Notes: a model not told the origin generated them from the sequence alone. Counted from the first letter of the stretch, positions 15,528 through 38,866 are shown. The stretch is DNA of 64,000 nt from Macrostomum hystrix (GCA_950097015.1 CATNEN010000038.1:3968001-4032000), one strand, 5' to 3'. A program made the numbers and translations.

Positions 15528-18500
15528 ATGCGTCTCGCGCTGCTTCTGTTTAGCGCGGCTCTTTGCATCGCCGTCTTCAACCAGGGCGTCGACGCTAATC
15601 GGAATCGCAGGTGAGTTGCGTTCTAAGTACAAGTTCGAAATAATGAGACACGTAAATAACGAGAAGAGAGAACTGCTTAGTGTTGCACAACACTCAGACA
15701 AAATGATTCTCTTTTTAGTAAGATCAAACCCTCTTTCATCTTTCTTCGCAGAAGTATGGACCGCTGCCTAAGTCGCATGCGCAGCAGCATGTCTAAGCTC
15801 CGCAGTCTTAGCTCTAGCCGCAATCGTCGCGTGGCAGCAATGAGCGGCAGCAGGGCTCGGTCTAACTGGGCCCGCAGCATGAGAGTCCGTCGGGTGACTC
15901 GCGCCGCTCGCAACTATCAGATCACGCGAGTGAGCCGACGAGTCACCGTCAGGCGGTTCGGAGCTCGCAAGGTGCAACGGTACGGAGCGTACTCGCGAGC
16001 GACCTGCAGAGCGCTTGTGAGGCGCGTTGCAAAGCGCTCCTCCTACTCGATCTGCAAGCAGTCGAGTCCCCGCTTTGTCTCCTGCACTAGACGGCTCTAC
16101 ATGCGTTGCCCCAAGGGCTACTCGCTTCGGGGCAACATGGCCATGCGGGTCTACTGTCCGAAGCCGTACATACGTCGTGGCGCGACCTGCGTCCGCTACC
16201 GACGAGTTGTGGCTCGCCGAATGGCGTGTCCGCGCGGCTTCACCCGCTACGGCAGCCGCTGCGTGCAGCGTCTGAGCTTAACTTGCGCCGCCGGCTATCG
16301 CGTCTACAAAGGCCGATGCCACCTAGTCAAGTGCCCAACGGGCTATTCCAAGATTGGCAACAGCTGCCGCAAGAGCTGCAGACAAGGCTTCACAATGCGA
16401 GGCTCCATGTGCGTCCGTGTTCGGTACCGATGTCCAAGGAATTTCTATCTGCAAGGCGATCAATGCGTGCGCTATCGCTCGGGATTTGCCAGGTTAGATA
16501 GATTAGTTTTTTTTAAACTTTATCATGTCTAAGTATCACGTTTTACCTACGAGCTTATTTCCAGTTTTGCTTCGATTTATCCTAGTAGCTCCTGAGATTT
16601 TTTATTGCGATATCACCAACTCCAGATGCCGATCGGGCTATCACAGAAAAGGAGATAAGTGCATTCGCACTCTGAAATCCTGTCCACTCAACTACAAGCT
16701 GCAAGGCAAGCGCTGCGTTCTCACCTGCCCAAGCGGTCGCATACCCAGGCGCTCTAGAGATGGTCGTGTTCGCTGTGTGGTTATTATTTCCCGATGCCCA
16801 GTTGGCTACAAGATGAAGCGAATCAAAACACGCCAGGGCTTCAGGTAAGCTTCAGACAGTTAAAAAATTCGTCCCTATAAAAATAACAAGGTTTGATGGT
16901 CGAGTTTCTGAATTTTCACTTCCCACACGCAGGATCCAGTGCACAATGAATGGCGGTAGCTGTGTCAATGGTTTCCGCAAGGTGCGTCGCTACAAACGTG
17001 GCTACGCCTGCGTGAGAATCGCCTGCCCAAAGAACTACGCGAAGCGCGGCAGCTCTTGCGTATACCGATTTCGAATGCGCCGACGCTGCCCTACTGGATA
17101 CACGCTGAATGGAGCCACATGCCAGCGCCTCCGATGCCCAGACGGCTATATCCGACGCGGCAGCCGTTGCACTTACGCCAGATGCCCAAACGGCTACAAG
17201 CGAGCTGGTCGTATGTGCGTCAGGACGCGTTTCGTTGGAAGCTGCCCGTCAGGCTGGGCGCGGCATGGCAGGCTGTGCCGACGTCTGCTCTGCCCTGCCG
17301 GCTACCGAAAGGTTGGCCAGTACTGCATGAGTGAGTCCCAGTGCACTGTTGTCGATCATTTGATTACTGAAATACAAACCTGAAAGAAAAAACTAAGGAA
17401 TCCAAAGAACTTTCTACTTTAAAGGCAGGGTTTCAACTATTTTTCATGAAACTTACTCACTGCTGCAATTTAGACAACTCCTGTCCACCTGGCTTTGTCA
17501 GACGCCGTGGCATGTGCGTAAGAAGTAAGTCTAATCAGATCATTAGGTTCTTATCTGTTTACTTTTAGCCTTAAATATAACTGAAATTACTATTTCATTA
17601 CCAAAACCTGCAGCTCATTGCACACCAGGATACAAGAAAATTGGAAAGCTTTGCATTCGTAAGTACCTCCTTAAGAATGAACCAAATAATCTACAACAAC
17701 TGCTTTTGCCACCATTAACGAAAATAGTTGTGACCACGCAAAACTTTGAAAATATACGGCAGGTGACTGCCCCGCTGGAACCAAGACTTCTGGTCGCTTC
17801 TGTGTAAAGATGAGGTGTCCGAAACGATTCAAGCGAGTAGGAAAGAGCTGTGTGCGAGGTAAGTTCGAGATAATGTGCCAATAAATATGTAGATTTAAGA
17901 CAAACAGTGCACTGCAATCATTCCCATCCAACAGCACAATGCCCGAAGGGTTATACTAAGCGCACAATTCGTAAAAAAGTGTACGTTGGAAGAAAAGTCA
18001 GTGGATCGGAAAAGAAGTGCAGTTGTATCGGGACCAAGACTGACAAAAAGCCGTCGAAAAAGAATTCCATCGACATGGCCTTCGTGGTGGACGTCACTGG
18101 CAGCATGGGATCCGTCATCAGCGCAATCAAGGCCAAGATCAGCGAGGTCATCAACGCAAACTCCGAGTCTCATGTTGTAAGTTAGTTTCCTTTACGAATT
18201 TCGATTATGATTGATGAATTCAAGTTCCGACTTTATCAAAGCATATCTCTCCAATGTTTGCTGCAGGTAGACAAATTCGTGCTGGTTCCATTCGGTGATC
18301 CGAACGTCGGTCCAGTGACCGTCACTCAGGCGAGAACAAAAAGCGCAGTGGTCACTCTGCTCAGAGCATTGAACTCAATGAGAGCGTCAGGTGGTGGCGA
18401 CTGTCCCGAGTTCAGCCACTCCGGCATGTACGAGGCTCTGACGCGAGTGAAGGACAACTCTATCGTGTATGTGTTTACAGATGCGAGCGCGTCATCTCGG

Positions 18501-21500
18501 GACAGGCGGTGAGTTCAAACACTTTCAAGCACTGCTAGCTCATTAAGAAAATCGCTTTATGCTTCCACTAAAAATGGAATTGTTTCCAGAAAGGAGAACG
18601 ACGTCCGAGCTCTCGCTGAGAGAAAGAACGTGCAGCTGAACTTCCTGCTGAGCGGAAATCTATGCGGGCAGCACGACTCGTATCGCAGCTTGTCTCAGTC
18701 GGCCAGGGGCGCCTGGATCAAGATGAGCAGCTCCCAGGCCAGTCGAGTGATGAGCTTCGTCAGCCGAGCGTTGTCACACGGAGCGGCAGAGCTGAGAGGG
18801 ATGAACCGCGACAGTCTGTCTACGTTCGTATCGAAGCGTGAGAAGTGCACCTGTCGCAATGTTCCTCGAGTGACAGCCAAGTACTCATATGTCAACGCCG
18901 TGACATGCTTGAAGAAATCATCAGGAGGTACGTCGAAGCGATGCCCCCGTGGCTTCAGCCTGACGAAGGGACGTTGTGTGAAGCACAGTTCATCGTTGCG
19001 CAGATGTCCGCCTGGCTTCAGCATGCAGACTAGGCGAGAGAAGGTAGTAGCCGGCAAACGGGCAGTCGGCGGATTCGTCAAGACTTGTAAGTGTCTAGAT
19101 GGCAAGCCGCCCTCAACGATCATAAAGAGAGTGATGGACATGGCCTTTGTCGTAGACGTGAGTGGCAGCATGAGCCGAGTGATCAGCGGAATCAAGAACA
19201 AGATCAGAGAGGTCATCGATGCAAACTCGCATTACGGAGTTGTGAGTAGTCTATTGATTTTACTGGCTTAAAACCGCTTCTATTTTATTACTTAATATAT
19301 TCGAAACATTTTAAATGCCACTAGGTGGATAACTTTGTGCTGGTTCCGTTCGGTGATCCGGTTGTTGGTCCACGAATCGTTAGTCGCGCTAACGATTTGA
19401 GATCGCGCCAGGAGCTGCTCGACGCCGTCAATCGCATGCGGGCAGCCGGTGGTGGCGACTGTCCAGAGATGAGTCGCTCGGGCATGTACCAGGCGGCATC
19501 CGTGCTGAAGCCGGGCTCCATCATGTACGTCTTCACCGACGCCAGCGCGTCAATCAGGGACAAAGTGTAAGCAAAACATTTTGAGGGGAGATTTTTTACG
19601 CTTACTTTTTATGCAACCAGAAATTGCTGTCTTAATATTTATGATTTTAATATACAGCACGTGAACTGGATGTTGCCAACAGTTCTTAAATTTGGACTCA
19701 AAGCAGAAAACTTGAAGAAGCAGGTACAAATCTAATTTTAAGTAGTATACGTGTCATACAGCGCCAGCTCATTTATTTTGAGATTTTGCTAAAGTTGACG
19801 TGAAAAACAAGCAAAAAGTTAAACTAAAAATCTTGAATATCACGTTTCAATATACTACCATACTCCATGCAGAACCGAATTAGCGCTTGCCAAGCTAATC
19901 AGCAGTCGAAATATCCAGGTGAACTTCCTAATCTCTGGACACCTGTGCGGACAGCGCACTGCCTACAAGGCTCTGGCATCGAGCAGCAGCGGTTCATGGA
20001 CAAAGATGAGCAACAGCATGTCTGACCGAGTTCTGTCCTTCATCAGCAGGGCCATGGCTCACGGTGCCAGCGGCATGCGCCAACTGAACCGCAGCGGACT
20101 GGCCACTTTTTTGCGGCACCACAACCGCTGTCGGTGCACCCGCAGCCGCCGCACAGTCGAGACCTACAAGTACGTGACCGTGCGCCGGTGCATGAGGCGC
20201 AGCGACTCAAGGACTGACAGTGGCAGCTCTGGTGGCAGCCGTGGACGACGTCGCTGCCCGCCGGGATTCCGGCTAGAGCGCGCTGCCCGTGACGGAAGTA
20301 TCAGATGCATTCGAAAAACTGCAGGTGAGTGTCAGAATATAAAATGGTCAATTTCAGTCTGCTTTTTTTATCATTTTGTAGGACCTAAGACAGTACTTTC
20401 TGACTATGGGCTATGCCAATAAGTTAGTGCAAGCGAATATTTTAGAAAGTGAAAGTTGACTGAAAACTCCCGTATTTAATGGCATTGACAAAACATGGAG
20501 TGAAGAAAACTTTCTTGCCTCTGATTATCGCTCAGTGCTCGAGTACTCAAGATCACCCATAAAAAACAAATTTGTGTTTCTCTCCAATCCTCTCTTAGAG
20601 GTGTACGGTGGGCCAAGACCCAAGCACGAGCCGTTCTATGACTTGTACAAGTCATTACCGGATCGTTTATTGTGTACAACTTATGTGGAATACTTTTCTC
20701 TAGAATAGTGCTGCATTGCAATCAGTAACTAATTGTCTGCAGCTAATGCATGACTTCAGAACTCTGGTTCCATTCTAAGTTAATAAGCACCTGCATTATT
20801 TCAGCGCGATGTGCTGCCGGTATGAAAAGAGCTGGACGAAAGTGCGTTAGTAAGTGCTAGTCACCTTCCTAATAAGTAATTTTTTAACGTAAAAAGGATA
20901 TTTCTATTTCTCAAAAACATACGAAAAAACGAAAAACAGAAAGCTGCCCAGCTGGAACAAAGGCAAACGGAAGCGACTGCGTTCGTGTTCGCTGCTCCAG
21001 GCACTTCCGGCTGTATGGCGACAAATGCATCAGAGGTAAGTTTCCGGAGTCTTAAAAATTATTGTGGCTTGTACTTTAAGTCAATCTTGGAATGATCGCT
21101 CATTGATTTAGTGCACTGCCCGAGAAACATGAAAACCAGGCGAGTTCGATCTCGCGTTCAAGTCGGCACTCGAGTGTCCGGATACACAAAGAAGTGCAGT
21201 TGCATCGGGACCAAGACTGACAAAAAGCCGTCGAAAAAGAATTCCATCGACATGGCCTTCGTGGTGGACGTCACTGGCAGCATGGGATCCGTCATCAGCG
21301 CAATCAAGGCCAAGATCAGCGAGGTCATCAACGCAAACTCCGAGTCTCATGTTGTAAGTTAGTTTCCTTTACGAATTTCGATTATGATTGATGAATTCAA
21401 GTTCCGACTTTATCAAAGCATATCTCTCCAATGTTTGCTGCAGGTAGACAAATTCGTGCTGGTTCCATTCGGTGATCCGAACGTCGGTCCAGTGACCGTC

Positions 21501-24500
21501 ACTCAGGCGAGGACAAAAAGCGCAGTGGTCACTCTGCTCGGAGCATTGAACTCAATGAGAGCGTCAGGTGGTGGCGACTGTCCCGAGTTCAGCCACTCCG
21601 GCATGTACGAGGCTCTGACGCGAGTGAAGGACAACTCTATCGTGTATGTGTTTACAGATGCGAGCGCGTCATCTCGGGACAGGCGGTGAGTTCAAACACT
21701 TTCAAGCACTGCTAGCTCATAAGAAAATCGCTTTATGCTTCCACTAAAAACGGAATTGTTTCCAGAAAGGAGAACGACGTCCGAGCTCTCGCTGAGAGAA
21801 AGAACGTGCAGCTGAACTTCCTGCTGAGCGGAAATCTATGCGGGCAGCACGACTCGTATCGCAGCTTGTCTCAGTCGGCCAAGGGCGCCTGGATCAAGAT
21901 AAGCAGCTCCCAGGCCAGTCGAGTGATGAGCTTCGTCAGCCGAGCGTTGTCACACGGAGCGGCAGAGCTGAGAGGGATGAACCGCGACAGTCTGTCTACG
22001 TTCGTATCGAAGCGTGAGAAGTGCACCTGTCGCAATGTTCCTCGAGTGACAGCCCAGTACTCATATGTCGATTCGGTCACGTGCACCAGACGTTCAGTAG
22101 GCCGATGTCGGCGTGGATACAGGCTTGTGAGAGGAAAATGTGTCAGATCAACCAAGCGGTGTGGACGAGGATACAGGCTTGTGAAAGGAAAATGTGTCAG
22201 ATCCGCCTCTAGATGCGGAAGAGGATACAGGCTATTGAAGGGCAAGTGCGTTGCAGCAGAAGTCGGAGGTAAGTTTTCTGTGAGGTCCGGATTTCTTTCT
22301 TGATTTTTTCGCATCTAACGAGAAAAATGCTTTTCAGTTTCATGTGGCGCATTCCGTTGCACTGGTGGAATGTCTTGCTTAAAGAAGTACCGCTACTCGG
22401 CCCCGGTCAGAGCAGCAGCGAGCAAAGCACACAGCGCCCGTCTAGCCAGCGCCGCTCGGTGGTACAATGCCAGAAGAGCGGCTGAAGCCCGGCGTCATCA
22501 AGTTTTTATTAGAAGTTTCGCAGCTCGTTTCTCAGGTTTGGCCCAGCTTACAACTGATTACAGCTGCCTATAGTGACGATTGCAAATATAAAACCCCTTA
22601 CCTGTTTAGCTATCCGTCTGTCACGTTTCTGCGAACACCAAACCGGGACTCTAAGCTGCCCACGAGGAACGACCATCGACATTGTGAAAGGATTTTACGG
22701 TCGCATGTCGAACAAGCTCTGTAACAGAGGGCCAATTCGGACTACTTCTTGTTCGGCAGGCTCTGCCAACTCGCGAATCAAAAACACCTGCCAGAACAGA
22801 CAGTGGTGTCGTGTGTCTGCGAGCAATAGCGCATTTGGCGATCCCTGCGTTGGAACAATCAAGTATGTGGAGGTCCAGTTCAAATGCAGGGCGTCAAGAG
22901 CTACTGAATCTGCGAAAACTGCAGAGAACGCAAGGTATGCAGCTGCTCTGCGCGCGCTGACAAACAGCTACAACTTGATGAAGGCAAAGTACAATGAGTC
23001 ACTAAAGCGAGTACAGTCCATGGTTAGCAGATGCGCCTTTTCCGCTCCCAGGGCAGGTGAGATATCGTGAAATCACGAAGTTCGTTTCGCTCAATTTAAA
23101 TTATCCTATCGAGTAAAAAGCGGCAGATTAAAACATATTTATTGCTCTGCAGATGCTTGCAAAGCAGTTCGATGCGATCAGGGCACAAAGTGTGCGGTGA
23201 GAAGACAGAGTTTTGCTGGAAAGATGGCTTACAAAGCGGTGTGCGTGAGAGTGCCATCTGAAGGTAAGTTTTTGAAGTTCCATCTAACCCAATGCATGTT
23301 GTTAGACAATGTAACAGACGAATGAAATAATCGAATCTACAGTTCTGTGCGCCAGAATCAGCTGCGGCCGTGGTCGTCGCTGCGTTGTTATAAGTACAAA
23401 GCAACGTATTGGACGGGGGGTAAAAGTTGTCAAGTCCGCCAAATGCCAGCCAAAGAAGGGTAAGAATTGCTTTTTCCATGTGCTGTGCTGAGTCCAGCTG
23501 TCAGTTGCATTGGTCCAGCCGACTTTAAGAAGCACAATAACTGAATTTTATATCTGCAGATCTCTGCAGCACAAAGAGGTGCAGCTCGGGCTCCCGATGC
23601 CGAGTTGTCTACCGATTCAGGAAAGTGGTTCGCCGAGTACGCAGGCGCCAGAGACGATGCTCCTGCAAGAAGGCTGGAAGCAAGCCAGCCAAAGCTGCAG
23701 CTAGAGGGGGCTCCGTTGACATGGCGTTTGTAATTGATACGACTGGCAGTATGGGTCGAGTGATTCGCAGCATCCAGACCAACATTATAGAAATTGTCAG
23801 GGCAAGCAAGGGCACAGTCAGCAGGTTTGTTGTGGCGCCATTTAACGATCCAAAGGTGATTTCTATTCTAAAAAGCACGTTTTCTCTAATCTATATTACC
23901 ACTGATAACAAAAGTCGGTCTTGACTAAATTTATCTAGGCTGGCCCGCTGACCGTCAGCACTAGTGCGAAGCCCATTGTGTCAGCAATCAAGCGCCTCCG
24001 AGCCAGCGGCGGCGGTGACTGTCCGGAGATGGCCATGCATGGTATTCTTGAAGCCGCCAATAAGGTGAACCGCGGCTCCGTCATCTACGTGTTTACCGAC
24101 GCCAGTGCCAAGGACTACGGCCTGCTAAAGAAGGTGATGCGATTATTATCTGAGCTTCTTCTTGAACTAATTCTCCCGAATAATTTGTTCTCGTTCTGTC
24201 TTTTTTTGTAGGTTCGCAATGTAGTAGACAGAAAGGATTTGCAGATGGTGTTTATTGTGACTGGGAGACTGTGCGGAAGCAGCTACCACAATGAGTACCA
24301 GGCTCTCGCTAAGGGTAACGGTCGCGTGGTTACACTGCACAGCAGAAACATCGACAAGGTTTTGAGCTTTATCCGTCGCGCTGTAGCCTTCGGCAGCTCC
24401 CGTCTAAGAAGCATGAACGTATCTGATCTGAGCAGCTATGTTGGAAAGTGCAAGTGCAGAAAAGTAACCCGTGTCATTAAAAAGACGTACAGGCAGTACT

Positions 24501-27500
24501 ATCGGGTGGCAACCTGCACCCGTCGATCTCCGGGTGACTGCTCGTCTAGGAAGTGCAGCAAGGGCTTTAAGTGCGTCACAATCAGAACGCAGTCTTTGCT
24601 TAGTAAAGCTATCACGCGTTGCGTTCGTTCAAGCAGTAAGTTACGAGCTGGATACTTGGTATCGCAAACAAGTAGATTTAATTTACATACCATATTTTCA
24701 TTGAGCCAATAATTAAATTATTTCAACAGACCCGTGCAACAACGTAAAATGCAGCGTCGGATTCACCTGCAAGGTGCGCCACTATGGTCGCGTGTACGTC
24801 AGAGGTGGGCGCAGGTACCGACTAGTCAGATTCAAGGCAGCATGTGTACGAGTCAACAACGGTAAGTGAATTGCAATCTATTAACATTATTACTTTTCGT
24901 GTGTCGATACATTACAAGCTTTGTGGAGCAGTTCGTTTGCCTTTTGTGCCAGATCTTTGCGCCCGAGTTCGCTGCGGACGATTTAGACGCTGCGTTGTTG
25001 CGAATCGGTTTAGCCAGGCGTACAGGACTCAAAGCGCCAAGCGTTACAAACTAATGCTAGCCCGCCGAGCTGCTGAATTAAAAAAGCGCAAGGCTTCCTT
25101 TGAACGGCGGTTTGCTGCTAGATTGAAGGGTCTCACCCAACGAGGATCAAAGAGGGATCGAAAATCAGGTGATTTGGTCACTTACTGGCTTTTTAAACTA
25201 TTATGAGCTAAGAATGTATTATCCGATGCGTTTAATCCGCAACGCATCGGCTACCGTTCAAATTTTTTCAGTTGATAAGCTTAAAAAAAGGCTGAATCAA
25301 CAGCGCAAGTCCTACCTGGCTGTTTTGGATAGACTTTACAAGCGAAGCCTAGCTCAGCTGCGGACTGCATTCAACAGATCCAAGACTATGACCGTTAGGT
25401 GTGTAGGACCAAAGACTGAGAAGAGTAAGTTGGCGATCAACGAAATTAATCATCCTATTCATAGAGGTCCTAAAATCTATACTAGTAAATTTTTGCATTT
25501 TGCAGATCCATGCAGCAGGGTTAAATGTCGCTTAGGCAAGACTTGTACTTCCAAGGTGTCAAGAAGTGGACGGATGACCTCGCGATGTGTAAAGACGAAA
25601 AGTAATTTAAAACGAAACTTACGTAACTGCTTAAACACTTAAAGATTAAACTTCAACTACATAGTACTTCGGGATGCGAAACGATAGTTATTTTTGCCAA
25701 AAACCGTCCCTTCAGATCTTTGCAGTACCAAGAAGTGTCCCAAGGGTACAAGATGCGTCATCAGCAGTGCCGTCACATCAGATGGTCGTAAATATAGGGA
25801 AACCAGAAGAAGGCAAGGCCAAAAGTATGTGAAAGCTCGCCACGCTCTGAGATCCAGGTATACAGCCACATACCGCGCCACCAAGTCTACACTAAGAAGC
25901 GCTAAGAAGTCGTTCAGAAGAGCCATCGTGACAGCTAAAAAGTCTAAAAGAGCTTCAACAATTCGAGCACTGAAGACTTCATGGAGGTCGCAGCAGAAGC
26001 GTCTTAGAGCAAGTCTCCGTCAGCTAACAAGTCGCTATATTTTAGCGACTCGGGCGCTCCGAGCGGCATACAAGCGTAACTTACTCAAAGTGTCCAAGAC
26101 ATACAAAAAGCGTCAGCTGGTCAAGAAGTTCGCCCAGTGCCGAGCCGATCCATGCGCCAGAGCCAAGTGCAAATCCGGCTACAGATGTTCTGTTGTGCGA
26201 CGTTACACCAAAAAATTCGCATCCTACGTCCAGCACAGACGTCTCGTCATGCAGGCATTCTTCAAGAAAGTGCGTAGTCTGCGAAAAGCGCCCACCAAGA
26301 AATCTCGGGGCAGGCGCGTTAGCTATCAGGAGTACAGAAAGATGGCCAGTAAAGCCGGAAAATCCCTATCGCAAAATTTGAAGGCACTACGCAAAAAATA
26401 TGGAGAATCAACGTTCAAGAATAGAGTGAAAGAAGTTGCAAGATGCATTCCAAGACCACAGCGTAAGTGATGTCTTTGATAATCGCATTAGAATAAAGCA
26501 TTAAAAGGAGCTATTTACAATTTCAGGAACATGCCTTCATAAGAAGTGTGGGGCTGGAACTAGATGCGTTGTGCGGAGTGTTCCGACTTGGTGGTACAAG
26601 TTATACCGAAAAAGTGTCAAGCGAGCCTACCTAAGATTTAAGACTCGATTACAAACTGTTGTCGCTCGACTGAGTCGTCAAGGTCGCAGTAGCAGGCAGA
26701 AACTCAGCAGGCGTGTAAGATCCAAGGAAAGAAGAGGCGGCAGACGACTGAGATCCAAGGGAAGACGAGGCGGCAGACGTGTGAGATCCAAGGGAAGACG
26801 AGGCGGCAGACGACTGAGATCCAAGGGAAGACGAGGCGGCAGACGTGTGAGATCCAAGGGAAGACGAGGCGGCAGACGACTGAGATCCAAGGGAAGACGA
26901 GGCGGCAGACGACTGAGATCCAAGGGAAGACGAGGCGGCAGACGACTGAGATCCAAGGGAAGACGAGGCGGCAGACGTGTGAGATCCAAGGGAAAACGAG
27001 GCGGCAGACGTGTGAGATCCAAGGGAAGACGAGGCGGCAGACGTGTGAGATCCAAGGGAAGACGAGGCGGCAGACGTGTGAGATCCAAGGGAAGACGAGG
27101 CGGCAGACGACTGAGATCCAAGGGAAGACGAGGCGGCAGACGACTGAGATCCAAGGGAAGACGAGGCGGCAGACGTGTGAGATCCAAGGGAAAACGAGGC
27201 GGCAGACGTGTGAGATCCAAGGGAAGACGAGGCGGCAGACGTGTGAGATCCAAGGGAAGACGAGGCGGCAGACGTGTGCGATCCAAGGGAAAACGAGGCG
27301 GCAGACGTGTGAGATCCAAGGGAAGACGAGGCGGCAGACGTGTGCGATCCAAGGGAAAACGAGGCGGCAGACGTGTGAGATCCAAGGGAAGACGAGGCGG
27401 CAGACGACTGAGATCCAAGGGAAGACGAGGCGGCAGTCAACAAAAATCCAAGGTTAACAAGCGAGCCAGTCGTCGAATTAAGACAGCCAAGTCTCGTCTG

Positions 27501-30500
27501 TGGGGTCGGTTTAAGAAAGCCGTTAAGCGCTATCGCAAAAAGTTTAGAGCCAGTCAAAGCAAGATCTCCGCTCGCCGATGGAAGAAGTACTCTCACTCAA
27601 GCCAAAAGGTTCGTGCATCTGCCTTCCGACGCATACGAAGCGAAGCTCAGAAATATGCAAGACGAGTCAATAAGCTCAAGGGTTGGTTTTCTAGGAGAAT
27701 AGAAATCTACAAGAAGCGCATGGAGGCAGTGCGGAAGATGTCTGGAGCAAAGAGAGTAAAGGCCAGAGCTGGCCTTCTGAGGTTCTACCAGCGGACAATG
27801 AAATTGTACAGAGAACGGCTCACGGTTGCGACAAAGAAGTACTATAAACAGCGAAGTAGAATGCTGAAGAAACTTGAAAAGCGGTTGTCTCGCGCCCGAG
27901 GAAAGACCAGAGATCTACGAAAAAGGCGCTTTGTGAGACGTGCTATCTGCATGCCCATCAACCCGTGCTCGGCCAAGAGATGCCATCAAGGATTCGTCTG
28001 TCGAGTGCGCCGTGTCCGAAGCGGCAGAAATCCAAGATTTAAGAAGATTGCGCGCTGCGAGAGATATGGTAGGAAAACTCGCGTTCTGACTCAATTGGAA
28101 AATGCGAAGATACAATGCTTAAATGTATTCGTATACACATGTACACATGTACATCTAGGGAAATTATGAACTATTGGTATTTATGAAACTTTGTAATCAC
28201 ACAATGAGTATACTAGTACTTCTGCCGGCTAGACCATTTAAAGCCGAAGCTGAAAACCGAAAATACTAAAAATCTGTAGCGAAATATGTTTCTTAACAAA
28301 GGCTAAGCGTCTAATTATTAGCATTATATTGCATTATCCACTTAAAGATCCGTGCAAGAATATCAAGTGCTCACGTTCAAGCCGGTGCGTAGTCAGACGA
28401 ACAGCCACAAAGGAACTCCAGGCTTATCGCTGGTACGCCCGCAAGTCTAGCCGACGCCACAACAAGGCAGTAAAGAGTCTGCGAAGGAACATTCGCCAAC
28501 GTGTGCGCAAGATTAAAAGGCATGCGATCAGGCGTTACAAACGACAGGTGCGGACTGTCCGTCGCAGACTTAGTGGCCGCCGATTTGCTAGTCGCATTGG
28601 AGGCCTGAAGCAATCTCTGGTCAGAAGATTGCAGCGCTGCAACAGGCGGGCGCGTAGAGATTACAAGCGCGGTAAAGCTGCCCTCAGACGTAGGCTCAGG
28701 CGAGTTCTGAAGCGCCACTTCCGGCGATACCTGCGGCACCATCGACGCTATTCAGTGAGAGCTGTGTGCGTCGCTGCTGAACAAGGTGAGTAAATGAAAA
28801 AATTGGAAATGAGGAATGAGCTAGAAGTAAATCCATGAGAAATATCTCGTTACTAGGAGAATTCATTGTAAAAAGTACACTACTTTATCGACCAGAAGAA
28901 CCCCAAATAATAGTTGTACAACAATGTCATATCGAATATATCGCGTATTTTAGTGATAATTATTCGTGTGCTTCTCACTTTTCCGACGGTTTTTTCGATG
29001 CCTTCTAGATCCATGCAGCAAGAAGCGTTGCCCCAGCGGGTCCAGGTGCATTGTACGCCGACAGCGAGCTGCACAGTACAAGCGATTCGTGGCCACCAGA
29101 CGGCGCTACCTCAGGAGTTACCGCATGACCCGAATCCACAAAACGCGACGCGTGCGGGCCGCCTTTAGAAGGAAACTGCAGAAGTTGCTGCTGAACTACA
29201 AGAAGCTGGGAGCTTTTAAGTTCCAGCTTGTAGCAAAGTGTTCAAAGAAAGGCAAGTCATGAATAAATTGCAAATTTCTTTTTAAGTGAGCATGTACCTC
29301 GCAGTTTCAAATAGTAAATAAAATTAGAAAAACGTATTGTGACTCGTAAAACTTTTAGCCTATTGTCCAAGAGGATACTTCCGCAGTGGAAGCCAATGTG
29401 TCCGATACGTTGAAGTCTGTCCCGAGTCCTACGTCCGCATTAGAAGACGTCGCGGATACCGCTGCATCAGTAAGTCTGTTTAAGATAAATTTTGCCACTT
29501 TTCAATGAAACATTGTGATGAGAAAAAGTTTTCAATGCCTCGAATTCTGACTTCTATCCTCCAGGGTATTACAGAGTTTGCCCGGCTGGATACATGCACT
29601 TCGACAATCTCTGCGTGAAGTCGTGCCCACCAGGAACTAGAAGGTCGTCAAAGCGAGCATGCAAAGGTAGAGTCAAACGGTCTTTACAGAATTTTCATTG
29701 ACGCAAAAATTCCCGATTATTATGACCACTTTTATTTTAGTCGTAAAGTCATGCAGCACATTCCTGAACAATACAAAATGTGTGAGGGCTTGTCCGAAGA
29801 ACACAATCCCTGTTGGCCGGCGTTGCCGAAGTAAGTCTTGTTAAATCGAAGAAAAAACGATTGTTAAAGTACATTTTTCTTTCTATTGAAACTTTCAAAT
29901 GGTTTCTATTTTAGGATGTCCGAAGGCAGCGATCGCTCGAGATGGGAAGTGCCTTGGTACGCTGGGATAAATGTCAATTCAGAACTATTGTTGTTACAGA
30001 GCCTATATCCATGCATTTTGAAATTGACTACGCTTTACTTAGGAGATAAAAAATGATAGTTAGAAGCAAGCGTACAACAAGGCATTGCATTTCAGTTCCC
30101 AGAATCAACTGCCGCTCGGGATATCAGCACGGACAGCAGTGTGTAAAGAGCTGTCCCAAGGGTTTTTACGCGTTTGGCAGTCGATGCACAAGTAAGTCGC
30201 GTTATTCAATCTTCATAAAAGAACATAAAGACAAAAAAGAAACAAAAAATGAATCTCTGTTCTCGCAGGAGTGCGTTGCCCATCTGGATCCAAGGCTCGT
30301 TTCAGTCATCGCAGACGAAGAGTTCTCTGCATCCGTAAGCAGTTTCTCAGTGAAATTTATGTCTTTATGTCTCATTTTGTCTTGGGATATACCAATTCGC
30401 AAGAGGACTGCGGGCACTGGTAATCCTTTTGTTGACAGTACCCGCAGTTAGTGAGACACTTTTTTGTTTTTTATTTTTTGCTTTGTTAGCAGATGAACAT

Positions 30501-33500: not shown

Positions 33501-36500
33501 ATGCCCGAAGTCCTACATGATGAAGGTCTTTAGCATCCGCTTCCGTTACAGAAAGACAAGCTACGTTAGGCGTTATGCCGTGTGTCGGGAAGATCTCTGT
33601 ACGAAGGTGCGCTGCTCTTCAGGAGAAAAGTGCATTGTTAACAAAGTGATGGCCGGCAGGCGCCGTACAAAGCAAGTAGCTGCCTGCGTGAAGAATCAGG
33701 TTGATCCGTGCTCACGCATGACTTGCCGGCGGGGCTACAAGTGCAAATCCGCGTCTGACAGGAGCGGAAGCAAAAGGGCAAGGTGTGTGAGAATAGCACC
33801 CAACTGCCGCGGTGGCTTGGTCATCTTCCGACGTCGATGCCGCCGCAGATGTCCAAAGCGGTATCGCATCATCAGCAAGCGAGTTGGAGAGACACTCCAG
33901 AGAATATGCGTCCGTGACGCTTGCTCCAAGGGTCGATACTTTTTATTCGATAGATGCACAAGCCGGTGCCCGATCGGTATGAAGTCTCGACAAAAGTTGT
34001 ACACAAAGACGTACAGTTTTAAATATTGTCAGCCAAAGCATTGCAAGGGTCGCAGATTCAGGATCGGGCGCCGTTGCGTGAAGTCCTGTCCAGCTGGGTA
34101 CAGACGCCGCTACTACAGAACGCGCCGCGGATTGAGCCGGTACTGTCTTTCCTATGTCTGCAAAAAAGGCTACTATAAACTGGGTCGACGCTGCGTACGA
34201 CGATGCGGCAAGAACTACCGGTTGAGGACATACACGAGAGGCGAACACACCTTCGGGGTCTGTGAGCCGGTTGAGTGTGGCAAGAGTTTTGTGTTTGTTG
34301 CTGGAAAGTGCAGACCAGCCCTGAAGGGTTGCTACGATCGAGTGTACAGTTGCAGGGCCATGGCAAGAAGAAAACGCTGCTCAAGCAAACTTGTGAGCTA
34401 TTTGTGCCCAGTTGCGTGCAAGAAGTGCAAGCCCAGCAAACGAAAGTTCTGCACTTGCACCAGCTCTGGTGACCCGCACTATCGAACCTTTGACGGCAAA
34501 TGGATCACATTCCAGGGAAAATGTAAATATCTTTTGGCGCAGTCAACACTTAAAAAGGGTTCGAAATGCAACTTCGAAGTGACAGCCAAGAACGAAGTCC
34601 GTGGAAAGGCTAAAACAGTGACCTGGACCAGGTTTGTCGAGATCAGTTTCCATGGCATCAAGATTCGTTTGCACCAACGACGTCGAGTTTTTGTCAACGG
34701 AAAGAGAATCAGACGACTGCCAATATCATTCTATCCTGATGGCAAGAAAATCAGAATTTATCACAGCGGCAGAAATGTTGTTGCCGAGTCAAAGTATTGC
34801 GGCATGCATCTTCAGTTCAATGGTAAATCGATCGCTGAGTTGCATCTCCCACGGTCACGATATGCCGGAAAGGTACAGGGAATTTGCGGAAACTGCAACG
34901 GAGATCCAAAAGACGATCTGAAAACACGCGACGGCAAAGATGTGTCTAAGCTTGGAGCGCAAGGCTATGCGAAGATTGGTCAATCTTTTGCCGTTCCCGA
35001 TGACTCGTCTAAGAAGTACAGGTGCGAAGTTAGGGCGGTCCCGCCAGCAAACAAGATCTGCTCTAGCGCCATGATGAAAAAGGTTGCCACCAATGAGTAC
35101 TGCGGTTTGATTTTGGATAAGAGTGGTCCATTTAGTCAGTGCATTAATTCTAAGAAAGTTGATTTCGCAGGAATTTTCAAGAACTGCCAGTTTGACGTGT
35201 GCGAGTACAAAAGCCCTAGAAATCGCCGAAGGGCCGTCTGCCAATCGCTTGAGTCCCTCTACAACGCTTGCCTGGCTGCTGGCTTCAGTGTTAAATGGCG
35301 ATCCAGAAGCTTCTGCCCGATGCGCTGTGGTCCAAACGCAGTCTACAGTCAGAAGGCTAGCGCCTGCCCCAGAACTTGCTCGGATATTGGTCGCCGCCGA
35401 GTGTGCCGCCTACCAGATCGCGACGCCTGTGTATGCAAGCCAGGATTTGTCCTGAATGGAAGAACGTGCGTCCCGGAGAAGAGTTGCGGCGATGTTGTTC
35501 CCATCGACGTAGCATTCGTCGTGGAGGGAACCGATGATATTAGCACCGATGAGTTCGAGGCTCTGAAGAGCCTGGTTGTGAAGCTTCTTACAAAATATCG
35601 ACTGTCATTGGAATCCGTCCGACCTTCACTAGTTGTGTTTGGTAGAATCAGCCCGACTGTCAGCCTGTTTAGCGAGCATCAGGACAAGACTGAATTCATG
35701 GAATTTGTTAGGAAGCTGAAGAAAACCGGTGGTTCAACCGATAATCTGGAAGCTGCTCTACGAGTAGTAAACAAAGTATTGATGCAAGCGATTGGCGGCT
35801 TTAGGCCAGAAGTTCCCAAGTATGTGATTGTGCTGAAGAAAAGTTCTGTTCCTGCAACTTCTGACAAGCCAGTTCGCAAGCAATTAGAAAAGCTTAAGGA
35901 ATTAAAGGTCAGAGTCGTAGTTGTCAACTTGCCTAAGACAGGAAAGTCCAGTGTTGATGCAACCATGAGCGGACTCACTATCATCCAAGCTGGCATGCCG
36001 CCATTTACATCTATCCCAGCCATTTCCAAGGAGCTAGAGTCAACAGCCGGCTGTCCATTGGGCTTCAGAATGGAGAAAGATGGCTGCGTTGATGTTAACG
36101 AATGTACAGCCTCTGTTCCAGCATGCCACAGTGATGCCACATGTGTGAACCTGCCAGGTAGCTTCGTGTGTCTCTGTGGTGACGGTCTGCTGCATGACAG
36201 AGCCAGAGGATGCGTGACACCTGAGAAGCCGAAGGCGAGTTGTCCTGAAGAGCCCAAGTGCGACAAGGGCTTCTATTATGACAAGACAGCAAATAAATGT
36301 ATGGATATTGACGAATGCAAGGAAAATCCATGCCTCGGAGATCAAGCAACTTGCGTGAATCTCGCTGGCAGCTTCAAGTGTGGTTGTCCTGCCGGATTTG
36401 AGTACAATAAGTTCTTTGGCTGCGTGGACATTGATGAGTGCAAGGTAAAGAAGGACCCCTGCATGGGAGCTGGAAAGTGCATCAACATGCTCGGTTCCTA

Positions 36501-38866
36501 CAATTGCTCATGTGACTCAGGTTACTTGTACAAGAGCGGAGTTGGGTGCGAAGACATTGATGAGTGCGCATCGAACAGTACAAACACCTGCAAGGGCGGC
36601 TCAAAGTGCGTAAATACCGCGGGCTCCTTCAACTGCTCCTGCGCCAAGGGCTATCGATACTCCAGCGAATCCTGCGTGGATATCGACGAATGTGCTGAGA
36701 ATAGTAAATTGTGCGACGCGTCGGCAATGTGCGTGAATCAAAAGCCTGGCTATAAGTGCCAGTGTAAGCTTGGCGACAACTGGATGTACAAGGCAGGCGA
36801 AGGCTGCGTCCCAGACGAAAGCAAGGGAATGACAGAGCGCAAGGTTGACTTCTTCTTTTTAATCGACGTCTCGGACAAGCTGAAGGATTCAATTAGGGAC
36901 ATTCAGGGCTTCATCAACGGTCTGCTGCAACAGTTTAACACAAAGGAGGTGGCAGGTCTCAGCGCCCGCGTCACCGTGGTCCTCATGGGAAAGAAGGGCG
37001 AAGCTAGTGTGGCCCTCAGCCAGTCCCCTCTTGTGGGAATCGCAGAGAAAGTCAACGCGCTCACACCCCTGGGCGGTGATACAAATCTGCTCCAGGGCAT
37101 GAAGATGGTCGCTGAGGAGAGAAAGAAGGCAAGGCGAGACAGCACAGTGGTTGTCTTCCTTATTACCGCCTCCAGCATTCAGGCAGGTGATGGAAGTTTG
37201 ACTGAGATCAGGCGATATTCTGATGACTTCAAGTCAACAGGCAAGTTCTTTACGGTGCAAATCAGCCCGAGCGGTAACCCGGCGGAATGGTCGACCCTAT
37301 ACACCAGCGCAGAGATCAGCCTCTTTGTGACCGTCATCAGATCATCCGAGATGCTGACAATCTACAAGCTTTTCTATCTGCGAGTTTATCCTCTAATCAC
37401 GTGCCCAGCCGGCTTCGTAAAGAATGACGGCCTCTGCCAGCTGCAGACAGCCACAGTTAAATACTGCAAGACGGACACTGGGGAGCTCAGACCCGTGGGA
37501 ACCACCTGGCAAGAAGAGTGTTCGCAGTTTAAATGCACTGATAGCGGCGTGGAGGTGCTGTTCAGGAAGTGTCTGGGCTACGATGGCCTCTGCTACTCAA
37601 CTGAGGAATACTTCCCCTGCACTCAGGTGACAGGATCGCTTAACTGGAAGTGTCGATGCAGGTGCGTTTATTGTGTGGACGATTGACATAGCATCATGCC
37701 TACATCGACCTAACAAGTATCCTTATAAACCCTAAGTTTTGCCTTCTAAAATCTTATTTCAGGCTCAACTCGGTGACTGACAAAGTGACACGAAAGAGCT
37801 TCCAGTCCCTGTCATACCAGTCCATCGCTGCCGCCAACGAGACCATGATGACAGACAAGGGCATCGCCTGTGTGTTCCCGTTTAAATACCAAAACAAGTG
37901 GCATTACAGCTGCGATCTCTACGAAGGAAGATACTGGTGCTCATTCCATCGCTACCACGAGACAGGCTCCTGGGGCTACTGCAAAATCAAGGCTTCCACA
38001 AACAGGTGTACTGACCCGTTCGATTCGTCAAAGATTTACGTGGAGGGAGATCGGTGGAACCACGGTTGCAACGTCATGGAGTGCACCCACACTGGACTGA
38101 GGAGAATACCAAGTAAGTTTGCTCGGCCATGACGCACTAAAATGTGTTTTGTCACGTAGTTTACTTATCGAGAAGTTACAATTAAGCTTTCCCTTCTCAC
38201 CAACAGAGTGCGAAGCATCGGACAAGACTTGTAAGGACTTGAACACGGACAGCTACTCCTGCCGCATTGGTGACAAGCAGCACTCGAACTGCCTCTGCGT
38301 ACAGGATTCCTCCGGCTGGGGCAAGAACGAAATCGTTAGCGGCGACAAGGCCACTGTCATTACGGGCTCCGGCGGCGCCGTAGTCAGCATGTGTGTTGAC
38401 ATCAGCAGCGGCAAGAAGTACGAACAGGGACAGGAATGGACCACCTCATGCTTCACCTACAAGTGCACAGCTACTGGCGGTCAGCTGCTGCAGGCCAAGT
38501 GCCAGCAGAAGGATGGCACTTGTAGAAACATCGGTGACAAGGGCTTTGACTGCATGATCAGCGACAAGGCTCGGGCCAACTGCGAGTGCAGCAAGGACTC
38601 CTCCGGCAATCCAATGCTTGTCGCCACCTTTGAAGGTAGGAAGATTCAAAATCAGCTGTCTTATTTACTTCTCAACATGCATAGACAAAAATATAGTCGT
38701 TAAATTTTTGTTTTATCGAATCAACATCTCAGGTCGCCTAATCACGGAGGTGTACAAGAAGACCGAGGTGAGCACATCGCTTGCAATGATTGCAAAGAGC
38801 GCCAAAAAGACAATCACCAGTGAGGTGTCTTCTTCGTCGTCTAGCTCGGCTGGCACTTCCAAGTGA
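15528..38866 (+). CDS. Giant secreted Arg/Lys- and Cys-rich multidomain protein (~50 exons, ~5,900 aa est.); adhesive/cohesive extracellular-matrix-like
   Basis: Signal peptide MRLALLLFSAALCIAVFNQGVDA (15528-15610). Consecutive + strand exons, mostly phase 1. Domains: CPxGY repeats, 4 VWA7/hemicentin-type vWA, SUEL lectin, follistatin-N-like modules, (SKGRRGGRR[L/V]R)22, furin-like Cys repeats, ShK, vWD, C8, TIL, vWA, Ca-EGFs, vWA, FN2, VWC-like. Stop at 38866, AATAAA at ~39003. Confidence 0.88.
18068..18840 (+). other. vWA domain 1 (hemicentin/VWA7 type), 3 exons
   Basis: IDMAFVVDVTGSM..FVLVPFGDP..GGGDCPE..VYVFTDAS..QLNFLLSGNLC. Confidence 0.9.
19133..20120 (+). other. vWA domain 2 (hemicentin/VWA7 type)
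   Basis: MDMAFVVDVSGSM..GGGDCPEMS..MYVFTDAS. Confidence 0.9.
21188..22069 (+). repeat. Near-identical internal duplicate of 18011-18893 (vWA domain 3, including both introns)
   Basis: Exons and introns match by eye except for a handful of substitutions. Confidence 0.92.
22630..22887 (+). other. SUEL/rhamnose-binding (Gal_Lectin) domain
   Basis: CEHQTGTLSC..IDIVKGFYGR..C..C..C..C.VSASNSAFGDPCVGTIKYVEVQFKC contains the YGR, DPC and KY-like motifs. Confidence 0.9.
23715..24445 (+). other. vWA domain 4 (hemicentin/VWA7 type)
   Basis: VDMAFVIDTTGSM..PFNDP..GGGDCPEMAM..IYVFTDASAKD. Confidence 0.9.
26714..27436 (+). repeat. Coding 33-bp tandem repeat: ([V/L]RSKG[R/K]RGGRR) x22, protamine-like
   Basis: In-frame within exon ~26527-28068; 22 units counted from the translation. 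Confidence 0.95.
34330..34428 (+). other. ShK-like domain
   Basis: CYDRVYSCRAMARRKRCSSKLVSYLCPVACKKC has the six-Cys ShKT pattern. Confidence 0.8.
34450..37400 (+). other. vWD-C8-TIL-vWA-(EGF-Ca)n-vWA block within a 4.35-kb exon (~33314-37661)
   Basis: GDPHYRTFDG..GICGNCNG (vWD); TIL CGPNAVY..CPRTC..CVCKPGFV; repeated DIDEC..C.N..GSF.C.C; two vWA domains with degenerate MIDAS. Confidence 0.92.
37850..37985 (+). other. Fibronectin type II domain
   Basis: GIACVFPFKYQNKWHYSCDLYEGRYWCS..GSWGYC. Confidence 0.85.

What the first reader, a model, noticed from the sequence alone, without database searches (positions are those of the whole stretch)
17934..24540. vWA domains mounted on CxC-clamped beta-ribbon stalks inserted into small Cys modules (stalk-and-knob design, four times)
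Seen: the usual module is CPxG[Y/F]-x~6-C (e.g. CPRGFSLTKGRC). In the vWA units the loop is hugely extended: CPKGY-TKRTIRKKVYVGRKVSGSEKK-CSC-linker-[vWA]-EK-CTC-RNVPRVTAKYSYVNAVT-C. The same holds for unit 2 (CPPGF..KTCKC-[vWA]-RCRC-TRSRRTVETYKYVTVRR-C), unit 3, and unit 4, whose host is follistatin-like (..RRCSC-[vWA]-KCKC-RKVTRVIKKTYRQYYRVAT-C). Outgoing and returning segments are of similar length (~17-22 aa) and rich in V/T/Y/R/K. These four vWAs keep DxT/SGS MIDAS motifs; the two C-terminal vWAs do not. Inference: each pair forms an antiparallel ribbon locked by CxC:CxC disulfides that projects a metal-dependent adhesive head sideways, analogous to the extensible ribbon of apicomplexan TRAP/MIC2 or bovine ultralong CDR-H3.
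Basis: partly seen in the sequence, partly recalled or inferred. Interest (0 to 1): 0.88.

Follow-up and report, generated by a model that had tools for sequence, protein, structure and literature searches.

The report
vWA domains plugged into cysteine hairpins
A giant, very basic secreted flatworm (Macrostomum) protein carries four metal-site vWA domains, each framed by 3+3 cysteines; they probably sit at the tip of a disulfide-laddered two-stranded ribbon, but this is unproven.

Summary
On the + strand, four Pfam VWA_4 (hemicentin/VWA7-type) domains lie in one expressed, spliced gene. Each is preceded by C-x19-26-CxC and followed by CxC-x17-19-C. These lengths are identical in the Macrostomum lignano orthologues.

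For it:
- Cysteine parity fits, and single-vWA paralogues carry the same 3+3 frame.
- AlphaFold2 models a short-frame paralogue with one 10-residue strand on each side.
- One paralogue has lost exactly the two cysteines that the ladder would pair.
- In unit 3 the hydrophobic residues line up in one antiparallel register (p~0.006).
- The SUEL lectin in the same protein is nested in a module by parity.

Against it:
- AlphaFold2 folds the long outgoing segment of the M. lignano unit back on itself and leaves the return as coil, both at low confidence.
- Units 1-3 are 25-26 versus 17 residues, not equal.
- 17-20 floppy residues and about 25-30 helical ones separate the clamp from the vWA core, so a rigid stalk-and-knob is not shown.

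The TRAP/MIC2 likeness is an analogy, not membership. I rate it a new, lineage-restricted variant of vWA insertion, of moderate interest. The scan had already noted this stretch and its neighbours in this genome.

The parts
15528..15617 (+). Signal-peptide exon of the gene (MRLALLLFSAALCIAVF...).
   Evidence: translation. It aligns to the N-terminus of M. lignano P0138.
15756..17863 (+). Exons encoding ordinary C-P-x-G-[YF]-x6-C hairpin modules, with some longer loops of 15-18 residues.
   Evidence: Sub-threshold Pfam cEGF/EB hits. AF2 models each orthologous module as a 4+4 hairpin.
17940..18026 (+). Unit 1 outgoing segment: C1-x25-CSC.
18081..18845 (+). vWA 1 (VWA_4), with introns at 18177-18266 and 18509-18589, including the C-terminal helical extension.
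18846..18908 (+). Unit 1 return segment: CTC-x17-C.
18942..18977 (+). Ordinary module CPRGF..C lying between unit 1 and unit 2.
19005..19094 (+). Unit 2 outgoing segment: C1-x26-CKC.
19146..20128 (+). vWA 2, with introns at 19242-19324 and 19567-19872.
   Evidence: joints 19241>19325 and 19566>19873.
20129..20191 (+). Unit 2 return segment: CRC-x17-C.
21117..21203 (+). Unit 3 outgoing segment: C1-x25-CSC, with host CPRNM.
21258..22021 (+). vWA 3, with introns at 21354-21443 and 21685-21764. It is a near-identical copy of vWA 1.
22022..22084 (+). Unit 3 return segment: CTC-x17-C.
22337..23052 (+). Context: a SUEL lectin between two helical arms, inside a C-x4-C-x5-C...C module. There are 3 Cys before the lectin, 8 in it and 1 after it.
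   Evidence: Pfam SUEL_Lectin at 1.5e-20. Exon limits and Cys counts.
23565..23666 (+). Unit 4 host (follistatin-N-like C-x4-C-x5-C) plus the outgoing x19 segment and CSC.
23727..24448 (+). vWA 4, with introns at 23854-23936 and 24132-24209.
24449..24517 (+). Unit 4 return segment: CKC-x19-C.
35506..35946 (+). Classical vWA (PF00092) without a MIDAS motif (VEGTDD). It has no CxC frame.
36847..37278 (+). Second classical vWA (PF00092) with a degenerate motif (DVSDK).

Best explanation
Each of the four VWA_4 domains is a whole-domain insertion into the turn of a small disulfide-closed beta-hairpin module. In units 1-3 the host is an EGF-C-terminal-like C-P-x-G-Y...C hairpin. In unit 4 it is a follistatin-N-like C-x4-C-x5-C...C hairpin.

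The outgoing and returning segments pair as a two-stranded antiparallel ribbon held by nested disulfides. C1 bonds the final C at the base. The two CxC motifs bond each other at the tip (first C of the outgoing CxC with the second C of the return CxC, and the inner pair with each other).

The ancestral frame, kept in about 20 paralogous units, is short at about 8 residue pairs (13/7). In the clade of these four units the ribbon was lengthened once to about 17-20 residues.

The vWA keeps a MIDAS-type motif and hangs from the clamp on a 17-20-residue linker and a helical extension. It is a tethered, metal-dependent binding head on a polycationic, secreted, probably disulfide-multimerising gland or matrix protein.

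Shown: the sequence frame, its conservation, splicing and expression, and the vWA fold in the M. lignano relatives. Inferred: the disulfide connectivity, the ribbon, and the function.
For: 1. Parity. Every vWA has 3 Cys before it and 3 after it, while the neighbouring modules have even numbers. M. lignano proteins with one vWA between WSC domains carry the same frame, C-x13-CGC...CPC-x7-C.
2. AF2 of that short-frame protein (P0026, 44-row alignment). The outgoing segment is one continuous strand (504-513) and the return is one strand (718-727). They are of equal length and neither forms a hairpin. VIA alignments to ITIH1, whose vWA is itself inserted, span 505-743.
3. Co-loss. In own-genome paralogue L010 the outgoing Ca is Arg and the return Cd is Ser, while C1, Cb, Cc and C6 stay. 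Sister copies keep both cysteines.
4. Composition. The short outgoing x9 segments have beta-branched or hydrophobic residues at their centre and no turn formers. The unit-4-type outgoing segments have no Gly, Asn, Asp or Pro at the centre, and they are 19/19 in the window, in M. lignano and in a chromosome-7 paralogue.
5. Register scan. In unit 3, 5 of 6 hydrophobic residues of each segment face each other at one antiparallel register (permutation p about 0.006). Self-hairpin registers are never enriched.
6. Precedent. The SUEL lectin of the same protein is nested in a follistatin-like module by parity, 3+8+1 Cys.
7. Register arithmetic. The 13/7 frame keeps the register of the plain modules, with the closing Cys opposite C1+6.
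8. One origin. The four long units form one clade, 100/99 support.
9. Fold and secretion. The vWA fold is confirmed on the M. lignano ortholog (P0019) and paralog (P0026) models. The gene has a signal peptide, and Arg plus Lys make up 23.6% of the exon translations.
Against: - AF2 of the M. lignano orthologue holding a whole long unit (P0019) folds the outgoing segment back on itself: strands 725-736 and 739-751 around Gly737. It leaves the return segment (966-981) as coil. pLDDT is about 50 there, so this is weak evidence, but it is the only model of a long unit.
- A Gly sits at the midpoint of the outgoing segment in units 1-3, as it does in the plain hairpin modules.
- Units 1-3 have 8-9 more residues going out than coming back. 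That is 2-3 more than the module's own asymmetry explains, so bulges must be assumed.
- In true follistatin and EGF modules a CxC splits its two cysteines between upstream and downstream partners. This rests on my own knowledge, not on a test here.
- The co-loss is a single instance.
- The AF2 confidence on the short frame is only 50-62.
- The register signal is absent in units 2 and 4.
- No coordinates were available, so strand pairing is read from DSSP strings only.
Confidence: 0.55

Rival explanations
1. Two independent hairpins plus a single clamp. The outgoing segment is just a long version of the ordinary module, with C1 bonded to the first C of the CxC. The return is a second hairpin, with the second C of its CxC bonded to the final C. 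Only the inner cysteines tie the two ends of the vWA together. On this view there is no stalk: the vWA is a bead between two beads.
For: - The AF2 model of P0019 has a self-hairpin in both copies of the outgoing segment (578-588/591-602 and 725-736/739-751).
- The same protein has vWA-less modules with loops of 10, 15, 16 and 18 residues, with follistatin-like loops up to 24, forming a continuum.
- An x-G lies at the exact midpoint of the outgoing segment, and an x-[KT]-Y at the midpoint of the return.
- The N-side host differs between units 1-3 and unit 4 while the return type is the same.
- By analogy, EGF and follistatin CxC motifs split their partners (my own knowledge).
Against: - Co-loss of Ca and Cd, with C1 and C6 kept, would leave two orphan cysteines under this wiring.
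- AF2 gives single strands, not hairpins, for the short frame.
- The short and unit-4 outgoing segments have no turn formers at their centre.
- The paralogue P0003 has Leu-Lys in place of x-Gly at the midpoint.
- Self-hairpin hydrophobic pairing is no better than in shuffled sequences.
- AF2 did not make the return hairpin either.
Confidence: 0.25
2. The flanks have no fixed fold of their own. On this view they are flexible basic linkers, and their cysteines form other bonds. Those could be bonds to the vWA surface, to neighbouring modules, or between molecules during multimerisation of this vWD/C8/TIL-bearing protein.
For: - pLDDT is low on all flanks in both models.
- The paralogue subfamily with C-P-C-PxGY has odd Cys counts per unit, so some bonds must leave the unit.
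- The gene encodes a vWD-C8-TIL assembly of the kind that makes intermolecular disulfides in mucins and VWF.
Against: - The segment lengths are conserved exactly between species and paralogues, although the sequences diverge.
- The segments have strand-like V/T/Y/R composition.
- Parity closes within the unit in the four window units.
Confidence: 0.12

Closest known systems
Hemicentin / VWA7-type vWA domain (Pfam VWA_4, PF25106)
   Same: The HMM match is above the cut-off. The DxTGSM, GGGDCPE and FTDA motifs are present, as is an internal Cys pair (GGGDCPE...GxLCG). AF2 models of the M. lignano ortholog (P0019) and paralog (P0026) show a vWA fold.
   Different: The nine VWA7, hemicentin-like and uromodulin-like proteins from other taxa that I inspected have no flanking CxC frame. 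In this sample the frame is seen only in Macrostomum proteins and unnamed contigs closest to them.
Plasmodium TRAP / Toxoplasma MIC2 I domain in an extensible beta-ribbon (PMC7351488; PDB 4HQL, 4HQF, 4OKR)
   Same: A vWA/I domain whose N- and C-terminal flanks are tied by a long-range disulfide and can form a two-stranded ribbon. MIC2 and TRAP appear among the fold matches.
   Different: In TRAP the N-terminal Cys bonds the last turn of helix alpha-7 and moves with the open/closed switch, and a TSR domain and a membrane anchor follow. Here the clamp lies 17-20 residues before beta-1 and about 25-30 residues after the last core helix. There are two CxC motifs, no TSR domain and no anchor.
Inserted vWA domains of integrins (alpha-I in the propeller, beta-I in the hybrid domain) and of ITIH1 (PDB 6FPY)
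   Same: A vWA with adjacent termini plugged into a loop of a host domain. The ITIH1 alignment to the P0026 model extends over both flank strands, 505-743.
   Different: The host here is a 2-Cys (or 4-Cys) mini-hairpin rather than a folded sandwich or propeller. The connecting strands are disulfide-laddered and of variable length.
Bovine ultralong CDR-H3 stalk and knob
   Same: Design analogy only (my own knowledge): a two-stranded ribbon carrying a folded unit at its tip.
   Different: The antibody knob is a small disulfide-rich mini-domain generated somatically. Here the unit is a germline-encoded vWA of about 230 residues with a flexible tether. No homology is implied.
cEGF / EGF C-terminal hairpin (PF12662) and follistatin-N-like module
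   Same: The host motifs C-P-x-G-[YF]...C and C-x4-C-x2-G-x2-C...C fit. Relatives of the module region hit cEGF.
   Different: The window modules themselves are below the Pfam cut-off, at 18.2 versus 26.6 bits. They stand alone as 2-Cys hairpins.
Macrostomum adhesive protein Mlig-ap1 (PMC6410801, PMC8621496)
   Same: Both are giant secreted proteins, extremely rich in Lys and Arg with basic repeats and many cysteines. Both have a vWD-C8-TIL assembly, EGF-CA modules and a lectin domain.
   Different: The ap1 core is described as C-type lectin, vWD, C8, TIL and EGFs, with no vWA or SUEL lectin. The M. lignano orthologues of this gene are unnamed (BOX15_Mlig001212). The expression site of this gene is unknown.

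Membership tests
VWA_4 (PF25106), hemicentin/VWA7-type vWA | Profile match above the curated cut-off. | tested here: met
   The middle exons of the four units score 76.5, 69.8 and 65.5 bits against a cut-off of 27. The first exons score 24-40 bits. Own-genome hits fall at the same places.
VWA_4 (PF25106), hemicentin/VWA7-type vWA | MIDAS-type residues: DxS/TxS after beta-1 and Asp after beta-4. | tested here: met
   DVTGS, DVSGS, DVTGS and DTTGS are present, and FTDA occurs in all four. The Thr-equivalent position could not be assigned without coordinates.
VWA_4 (PF25106), hemicentin/VWA7-type vWA | Rossmann-like vWA fold. | tested here: met
   AF2 of the M. lignano ortholog P0019 gives core pLDDT 85-97, and of the paralog P0026 74-94. 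Foldseek E is about 1e-7 and VIA Z is 16-18 to solved vWA domains. The test was done on the M. lignano proteins, not on the spliced window protein.
TRAP/MIC2 extensible beta-ribbon I domain | An N-terminal segment disulfide-linked to the last turn of helix alpha-7. | tested here: not met
   The cysteines lie 17-20 residues before beta-1 and after two extra helices beyond the last core helix. The feature is as described in PMC7351488.
TRAP/MIC2 extensible beta-ribbon I domain | A tandem TSR domain and a transmembrane/cytoplasmic tail. | tested here: not met
   The flanks are Cys hairpin modules, and Pfam finds no TSR domain in the flanking exons. I did not scan for a membrane anchor.
Domain-inserted vWA (integrin beta-I / ITIH-like topology) | Both flanks of the vWA belong to one host fold and run side by side. 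| tested here: inconclusive
   For: parity, the single-vWA paralogues, equal single strands in the AF2 short-frame model, and co-loss of Ca and Cd. Against: the self-hairpin in the AF2 long-unit model. No coordinates or disulfide map were available.
cEGF (PF12662) as host module | Profile match above the cut-off. | tested here: not met
   The best window hit is 18.2 bits against a cut-off of 26.6. Relatives that matched only the query's module region reach 20-52 bits, and three of them pass the cut-off.
Follistatin-N-terminal-like module as host of unit 4 | Profile match; C-x3/4-C-x5-C-hairpin-C pattern. | tested here: inconclusive
   The pattern is present. No Pfam hit was found for the exon (protein 7).
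Macrostomum adhesion protein 1 (ap1) | Core of C-type lectin, vWD, C8, TIL and EGFs; expression in the adhesive glands. | tested here: inconclusive
   vWD-C8-TIL and EGFs are visible in exon 33379-37686. No C-type lectin was seen in the parts I scanned. Expression site was not tested. The papers list no vWA in ap1.

The most novel reading that the evidence does not exclude
The protein is built on a general 'socket' principle. Disulfide-closed beta-hairpin modules serve as insertion sites for whole domains: four vWA domains, a SUEL lectin, and long cationic helical hairpins. For the vWA units the hairpin has been turned into a CxC:CxC-laddered ribbon. Its length evolved from about 8 to about 20 residue pairs. 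This would be a germline-encoded stalk-and-head display system in a flatworm gland protein, found so far only in Macrostomum.
Probability: 0.4. Interest if true: 0.6.

Novelty: new variant of a known kind. Interest (0 to 1): 0.5.

Why it matters
vWA/I domains are classic inserted domains, and the geometry of their attachment controls how force and allostery reach the metal site in integrins and in TRAP. A vWA held at the tip of a tunable, disulfide-laddered two-stranded ribbon would be a new and very compact way of mounting such a domain, and could be borrowed for protein engineering. The carrier is an uncharacterised giant polycationic secreted protein. Its domain vocabulary matches flatworm and echinoderm temporary glues (vWD-C8-TIL, EGF, a galactose/rhamnose lectin, and Lys/Arg-rich repeats). 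It is therefore also a candidate component of Macrostomum secretions. If the rival holds and the flanks are independent hairpins, the finding shrinks to an unusual Cys frame around an ordinary vWA.

Tried and rejected
- Complex prediction on the window's unit-1 outgoing fragment (17937-18050) against its return fragment (18831-18929) gave "no answer" at score 0.03. It is evidence neither for nor against.
The same table was then rebuilt by extracting the segments from the session's files.
- Model coordinates are not exposed to scripts, so Cys-Cys distances and strand partners could not be measured. Only DSSP strings and pLDDT were used.
- I tried to read cross-strand covariation from 20 short-frame out/return pairs. 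The sequences are too few and too closely related, and alternative registers look equally plausible. I did not use this.
- The hydrophobic register scan is significant only for unit 3 and its orthologues. Unit 1 gives p=0.15, and units 2 and 4 are not significant.
- "Number of Gly equals number of extra outgoing residues" (2 in units 1 and 3, 3 in unit 2) is contradicted by the paralogue P0003, which has 25 residues and one Gly. I dropped it.
- Identity with Mlig-ap1 or ap2 is rejected on domain content.
- A first alignment for the second fold misplaced three return micro-exons onto the outgoing segment. It was rebuilt without them.
Whole units were studied on database proteins of M. lignano (P0019, P0026, P0138, P0139).

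Full report
**What the window holds**

The window is G000:C38:3968001-4032000 of a 220-Mb, 42-contig genome. It is eukaryotic and intron-rich. From about 15528 to at least 37686 the + strand carries one very large gene. Its nearest named relatives are Macrostomum lignano proteins:
- PAA92120/PAA68292, "hypothetical protein BOX15_Mlig001212g3/g1";
- UniRef A0A1I8GDF5/A0A1I8JAD7, "SUEL-type lectin domain-containing protein".

Per-exon identity to these proteins is about 45-80%.

The gene starts with a signal peptide. It continues with dozens of C-P-x-G-[YF]-x6-C modules, then the four vWA units of the finding. After them come a SUEL lectin (Pfam 1.5e-20), follistatin-N-like four-Cys modules with basic inserts, and a long RSKGRRGGRRV repeat. 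A final 1435-codon exon holds a vWD-C8-TIL assembly, EGF-CA modules and two classical vWA domains. Over 4231 exon-encoded residues, counted exon by exon, Arg plus Lys make 23.6%, Asp plus Glu 5.8% and Cys 5.4%.

Coordinates of every C1, CxC, MIDAS motif and return segment are and in the parts list.

The vWA domains are Pfam VWA_4 (PF25106), the hemicentin/VWA7 type. The middle exons score 65-77 bits against a cut-off of 27. They keep DxT/SGS, GGGDCPE and FTDA. The two C-terminal vWA domains are a different family (PF00092) and have VEGTDD and DVSDK instead.

Each vWA is split by two introns. Contigs from four runs of one study match at 99% or more and skip every intron of units 2-4 with GT..AG ends. 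The gene is therefore transcribed and the exon model is right. Unit 1 is 98-100% identical to unit 3 over about 550 bases, intron 1 included, and has the same GT/AG boundaries.

Some corrections are needed. The outgoing/return lengths are 25/17, 26/17, 25/17 and 19/19, so only unit 4 is symmetric. Unit 3's host begins CPRNM. A linker of 17-20 residues lies between the outgoing CxC and strand beta-1.

Whole units were examined on database proteins of M. lignano.

**The frame is conserved and has a shorter, older form**

In the M. lignano orthologues the four units have exactly the same lengths (25/17, 26/17, 25/17, 19/19), although the segments themselves differ at many positions. A paralogous gene on contig 7 of the same genome has a unit-4-type frame that is again 19/19 with a quite different sequence.

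This genome has at least 57 VWA_4 exon matches. About 20 distinct paralogous units, taken from this genome and M. lignano, carry a shorter version, C-P-x-G-x-x9-C-x-C ... vWA ... C-x-C-x7-C. These include proteins with a single vWA between WSC domains (P0026, P0022).

In a tree of vWA cores the four long units form one clade, apart from all short-frame copies, with 100/99 support. The lengthening therefore happened once. The nine VWA7, hemicentin-like and uromodulin-like proteins from other taxa that I inspected have no such frame.

A full HMMER scan of 1.84 billion representative proteins used the exon that holds return 1, a plain module and outgoing segment 2 as query. It found only 16 hits. 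Those covering the stalks are from M. lignano or from unnamed contigs.

**Two wirings fit the six cysteines**

I name the cysteines C1, Ca-x-Cb, [vWA], Cc-x-Cd, C6.
- Topology B: sequential bonds C1-Ca, Cb-Cc and Cd-C6, giving two separate hairpins and a single clamp.

Parity cannot tell them apart.

**Evidence for A**

1. AlphaFold2 of the short-frame protein P0026 (44-row alignment) gives one continuous strand at 504-513 before the vWA and one at 718-727 after it. They are of equal length and there is no hairpin. Ca (513) and Cd (718) sit at matching ends. pLDDT there is only 50-62. The VIA alignment to ITIH1, a protein whose vWA is itself inserted, runs from 505 to 743 and so includes both flank strands.
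2. In paralogue L010 the outgoing Ca is replaced by Arg and the return Cd by Ser. C1, Cb, Cc and C6 remain. The sister copies in L003 and L001 and in M. lignano P0004 keep both cysteines. The return micro-exon has normal AG/GT boundaries, and at Cd the codon differs from L003 by one base, TGC to TCC. Losing a bonded pair together is what A predicts. Under B it would orphan C1 and C6.
3. The centre of the short outgoing x9 segments is beta-branched or hydrophobic (FI, VE, KI, VT and the like). The unit-4-type outgoing segments have no Gly, Asn, Asp or Pro at their centre. These read as single strands.
4. In unit 3 (window and M. lignano), five of the six hydrophobic residues of each segment face each other at one antiparallel register. 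The permutation p is about 0.006, maximised over 12 registers. Unit 1 gives four (p=0.15), and units 2 and 4 are not significant. Self-hairpin registers are never better than shuffled sequences.
5. The SUEL lectin of the same protein has three module cysteines before it, eight of its own and one after it. It is therefore nested in a follistatin-like module by parity alone.
6. The 13/7 frame preserves the register seen in the plain modules of the AF2 model, with the closing Cys opposite C1+6.

**Evidence for B**

1. The only model of a long unit is AlphaFold2 of M. lignano P0019 (47-row alignment, mean pLDDT 56.9, vWA core 85-97). It folds the outgoing segment on itself, with strands 725-736 and 739-751 around Gly737-Lys738. 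It does the same in the truncated first copy. It leaves the return (966-981) as coil below pLDDT 50.
2. A Gly lies at the midpoint of the outgoing segment in units 1-3, exactly as in the 40 plain modules of P0138. The protein also has vWA-less modules with loops of 15-18 residues, with follistatin-like loops up to 24.
3. Units 1-3 have 2-3 more outgoing residues than the plain-module asymmetry explains.
4. In real EGF and follistatin modules a CxC sends its two cysteines in opposite directions. This rests on my own knowledge.

Weighing these, I put A at about 0.55, B at about 0.25, and "no fixed fold or other bonds" at about 0.12.

**What is not supported**

Even under A the head is not rigidly mounted. 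The outgoing CxC is followed by 17-20 residues of Lys/Pro/Ser-rich linker, which AF2 models as coil at about pLDDT 50. The last core helix is followed by two more helices, about 25-30 residues, before the return CxC.

The TRAP/MIC2 comparison is a functional analogy only. There the N-terminal Cys bonds the last turn of alpha-7 and moves with the open/closed switch, and a TSR domain and a membrane anchor follow (PMC7351488). None of this is present here.

The fold matches of the vWA core are generic: ITIH1, alpha2-delta, collagen VI N5, CMG2, alpha-M I domain, mussel PTMP1, MIC2, TRAP, and TFIIH p44/Ssl1-type subunits.

**Likely role (inference)**

The protein is secreted, polycationic and Cys-rich. 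It has a vWD-C8-TIL assembly, EGF-CA modules, a galactose/rhamnose-type lectin and basic repeats. That is the domain vocabulary of the flatworm cohesive glue protein Mlig-ap1 and of sea-star Sfp1 (PMC6410801; PMC8621496). It is not ap1 or ap2 by domain content, and its tissue is unknown. The four MIDAS-bearing vWA heads would be metal-dependent binding sites displayed from the module chain.

**Verdict**

This is a lineage-restricted new variant of vWA insertion. A disulfide map, or a model of one spliced unit with coordinates, would settle the topology.

Noticed in passing
window 26571-28169: An open frame of 532 codons. It consists mostly of a tandem 11-residue unit, RSKGRRGGRR[VL], inside the same gene.
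   Followed up: no
window 22337-23052: The SUEL lectin sits between two long helical arms inside a C-x4-C-x5-C...C module. The Cys count is 3+8+1, so the module's last Cys comes after the lectin. This agrees with scan note s1-850738.
   Followed up: partly
window 33379-37686: A single 1435-codon exon. It holds many Cys modules, a vWD-C8-TIL assembly, about five EGF-CA modules and two classical vWA domains without a MIDAS motif.
   Followed up: partly
window 18010-18560 versus 21187-21737: Units 1 and 3 are 98-100% identical at the DNA level, intron 1 included, at an offset of 3177 bases. This points to recent duplication or gene conversion. RNA contigs break at 21188 and continue with unit-1 sequence (table 7). 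The M. lignano models P0019 and P0025 look like chimeras made the same way.
   Followed up: partly
L004, L005, L006, L008, L012 (G000 contigs 1 and 7): In the short-frame paralogues the last vWA helix and the return clasp (x-C-x-C-x7-C-x) are each on a small exon of their own.
   Followed up: partly
L010:1227-2040 (G000:C1:10595500-10599500): In the first vWA after a signal peptide, Ca is replaced by Arg in the outgoing segment and Cd by Ser in the return micro-exon. Both are present in the sister copies.
   Followed up: yes
L013 (G000:C7:11360500-11370499, minus strand): A paralogous gene with repeated unit-4-type vWA units (19/19) and SUEL lectins. Next to them lies a 1228-codon open frame that looks like a retrotransposon polyprotein. 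I observed this only and did not analyse it.
   Followed up: no
L001, L003, L011, L020: A third kind of N-side host precedes the first vWA of another paralogue family: C-x2-C-x4-C-TYDK-x3-CSC, followed by a 22-residue spacer (NRTIEIVDPGDREYYNVS...).
   Followed up: no
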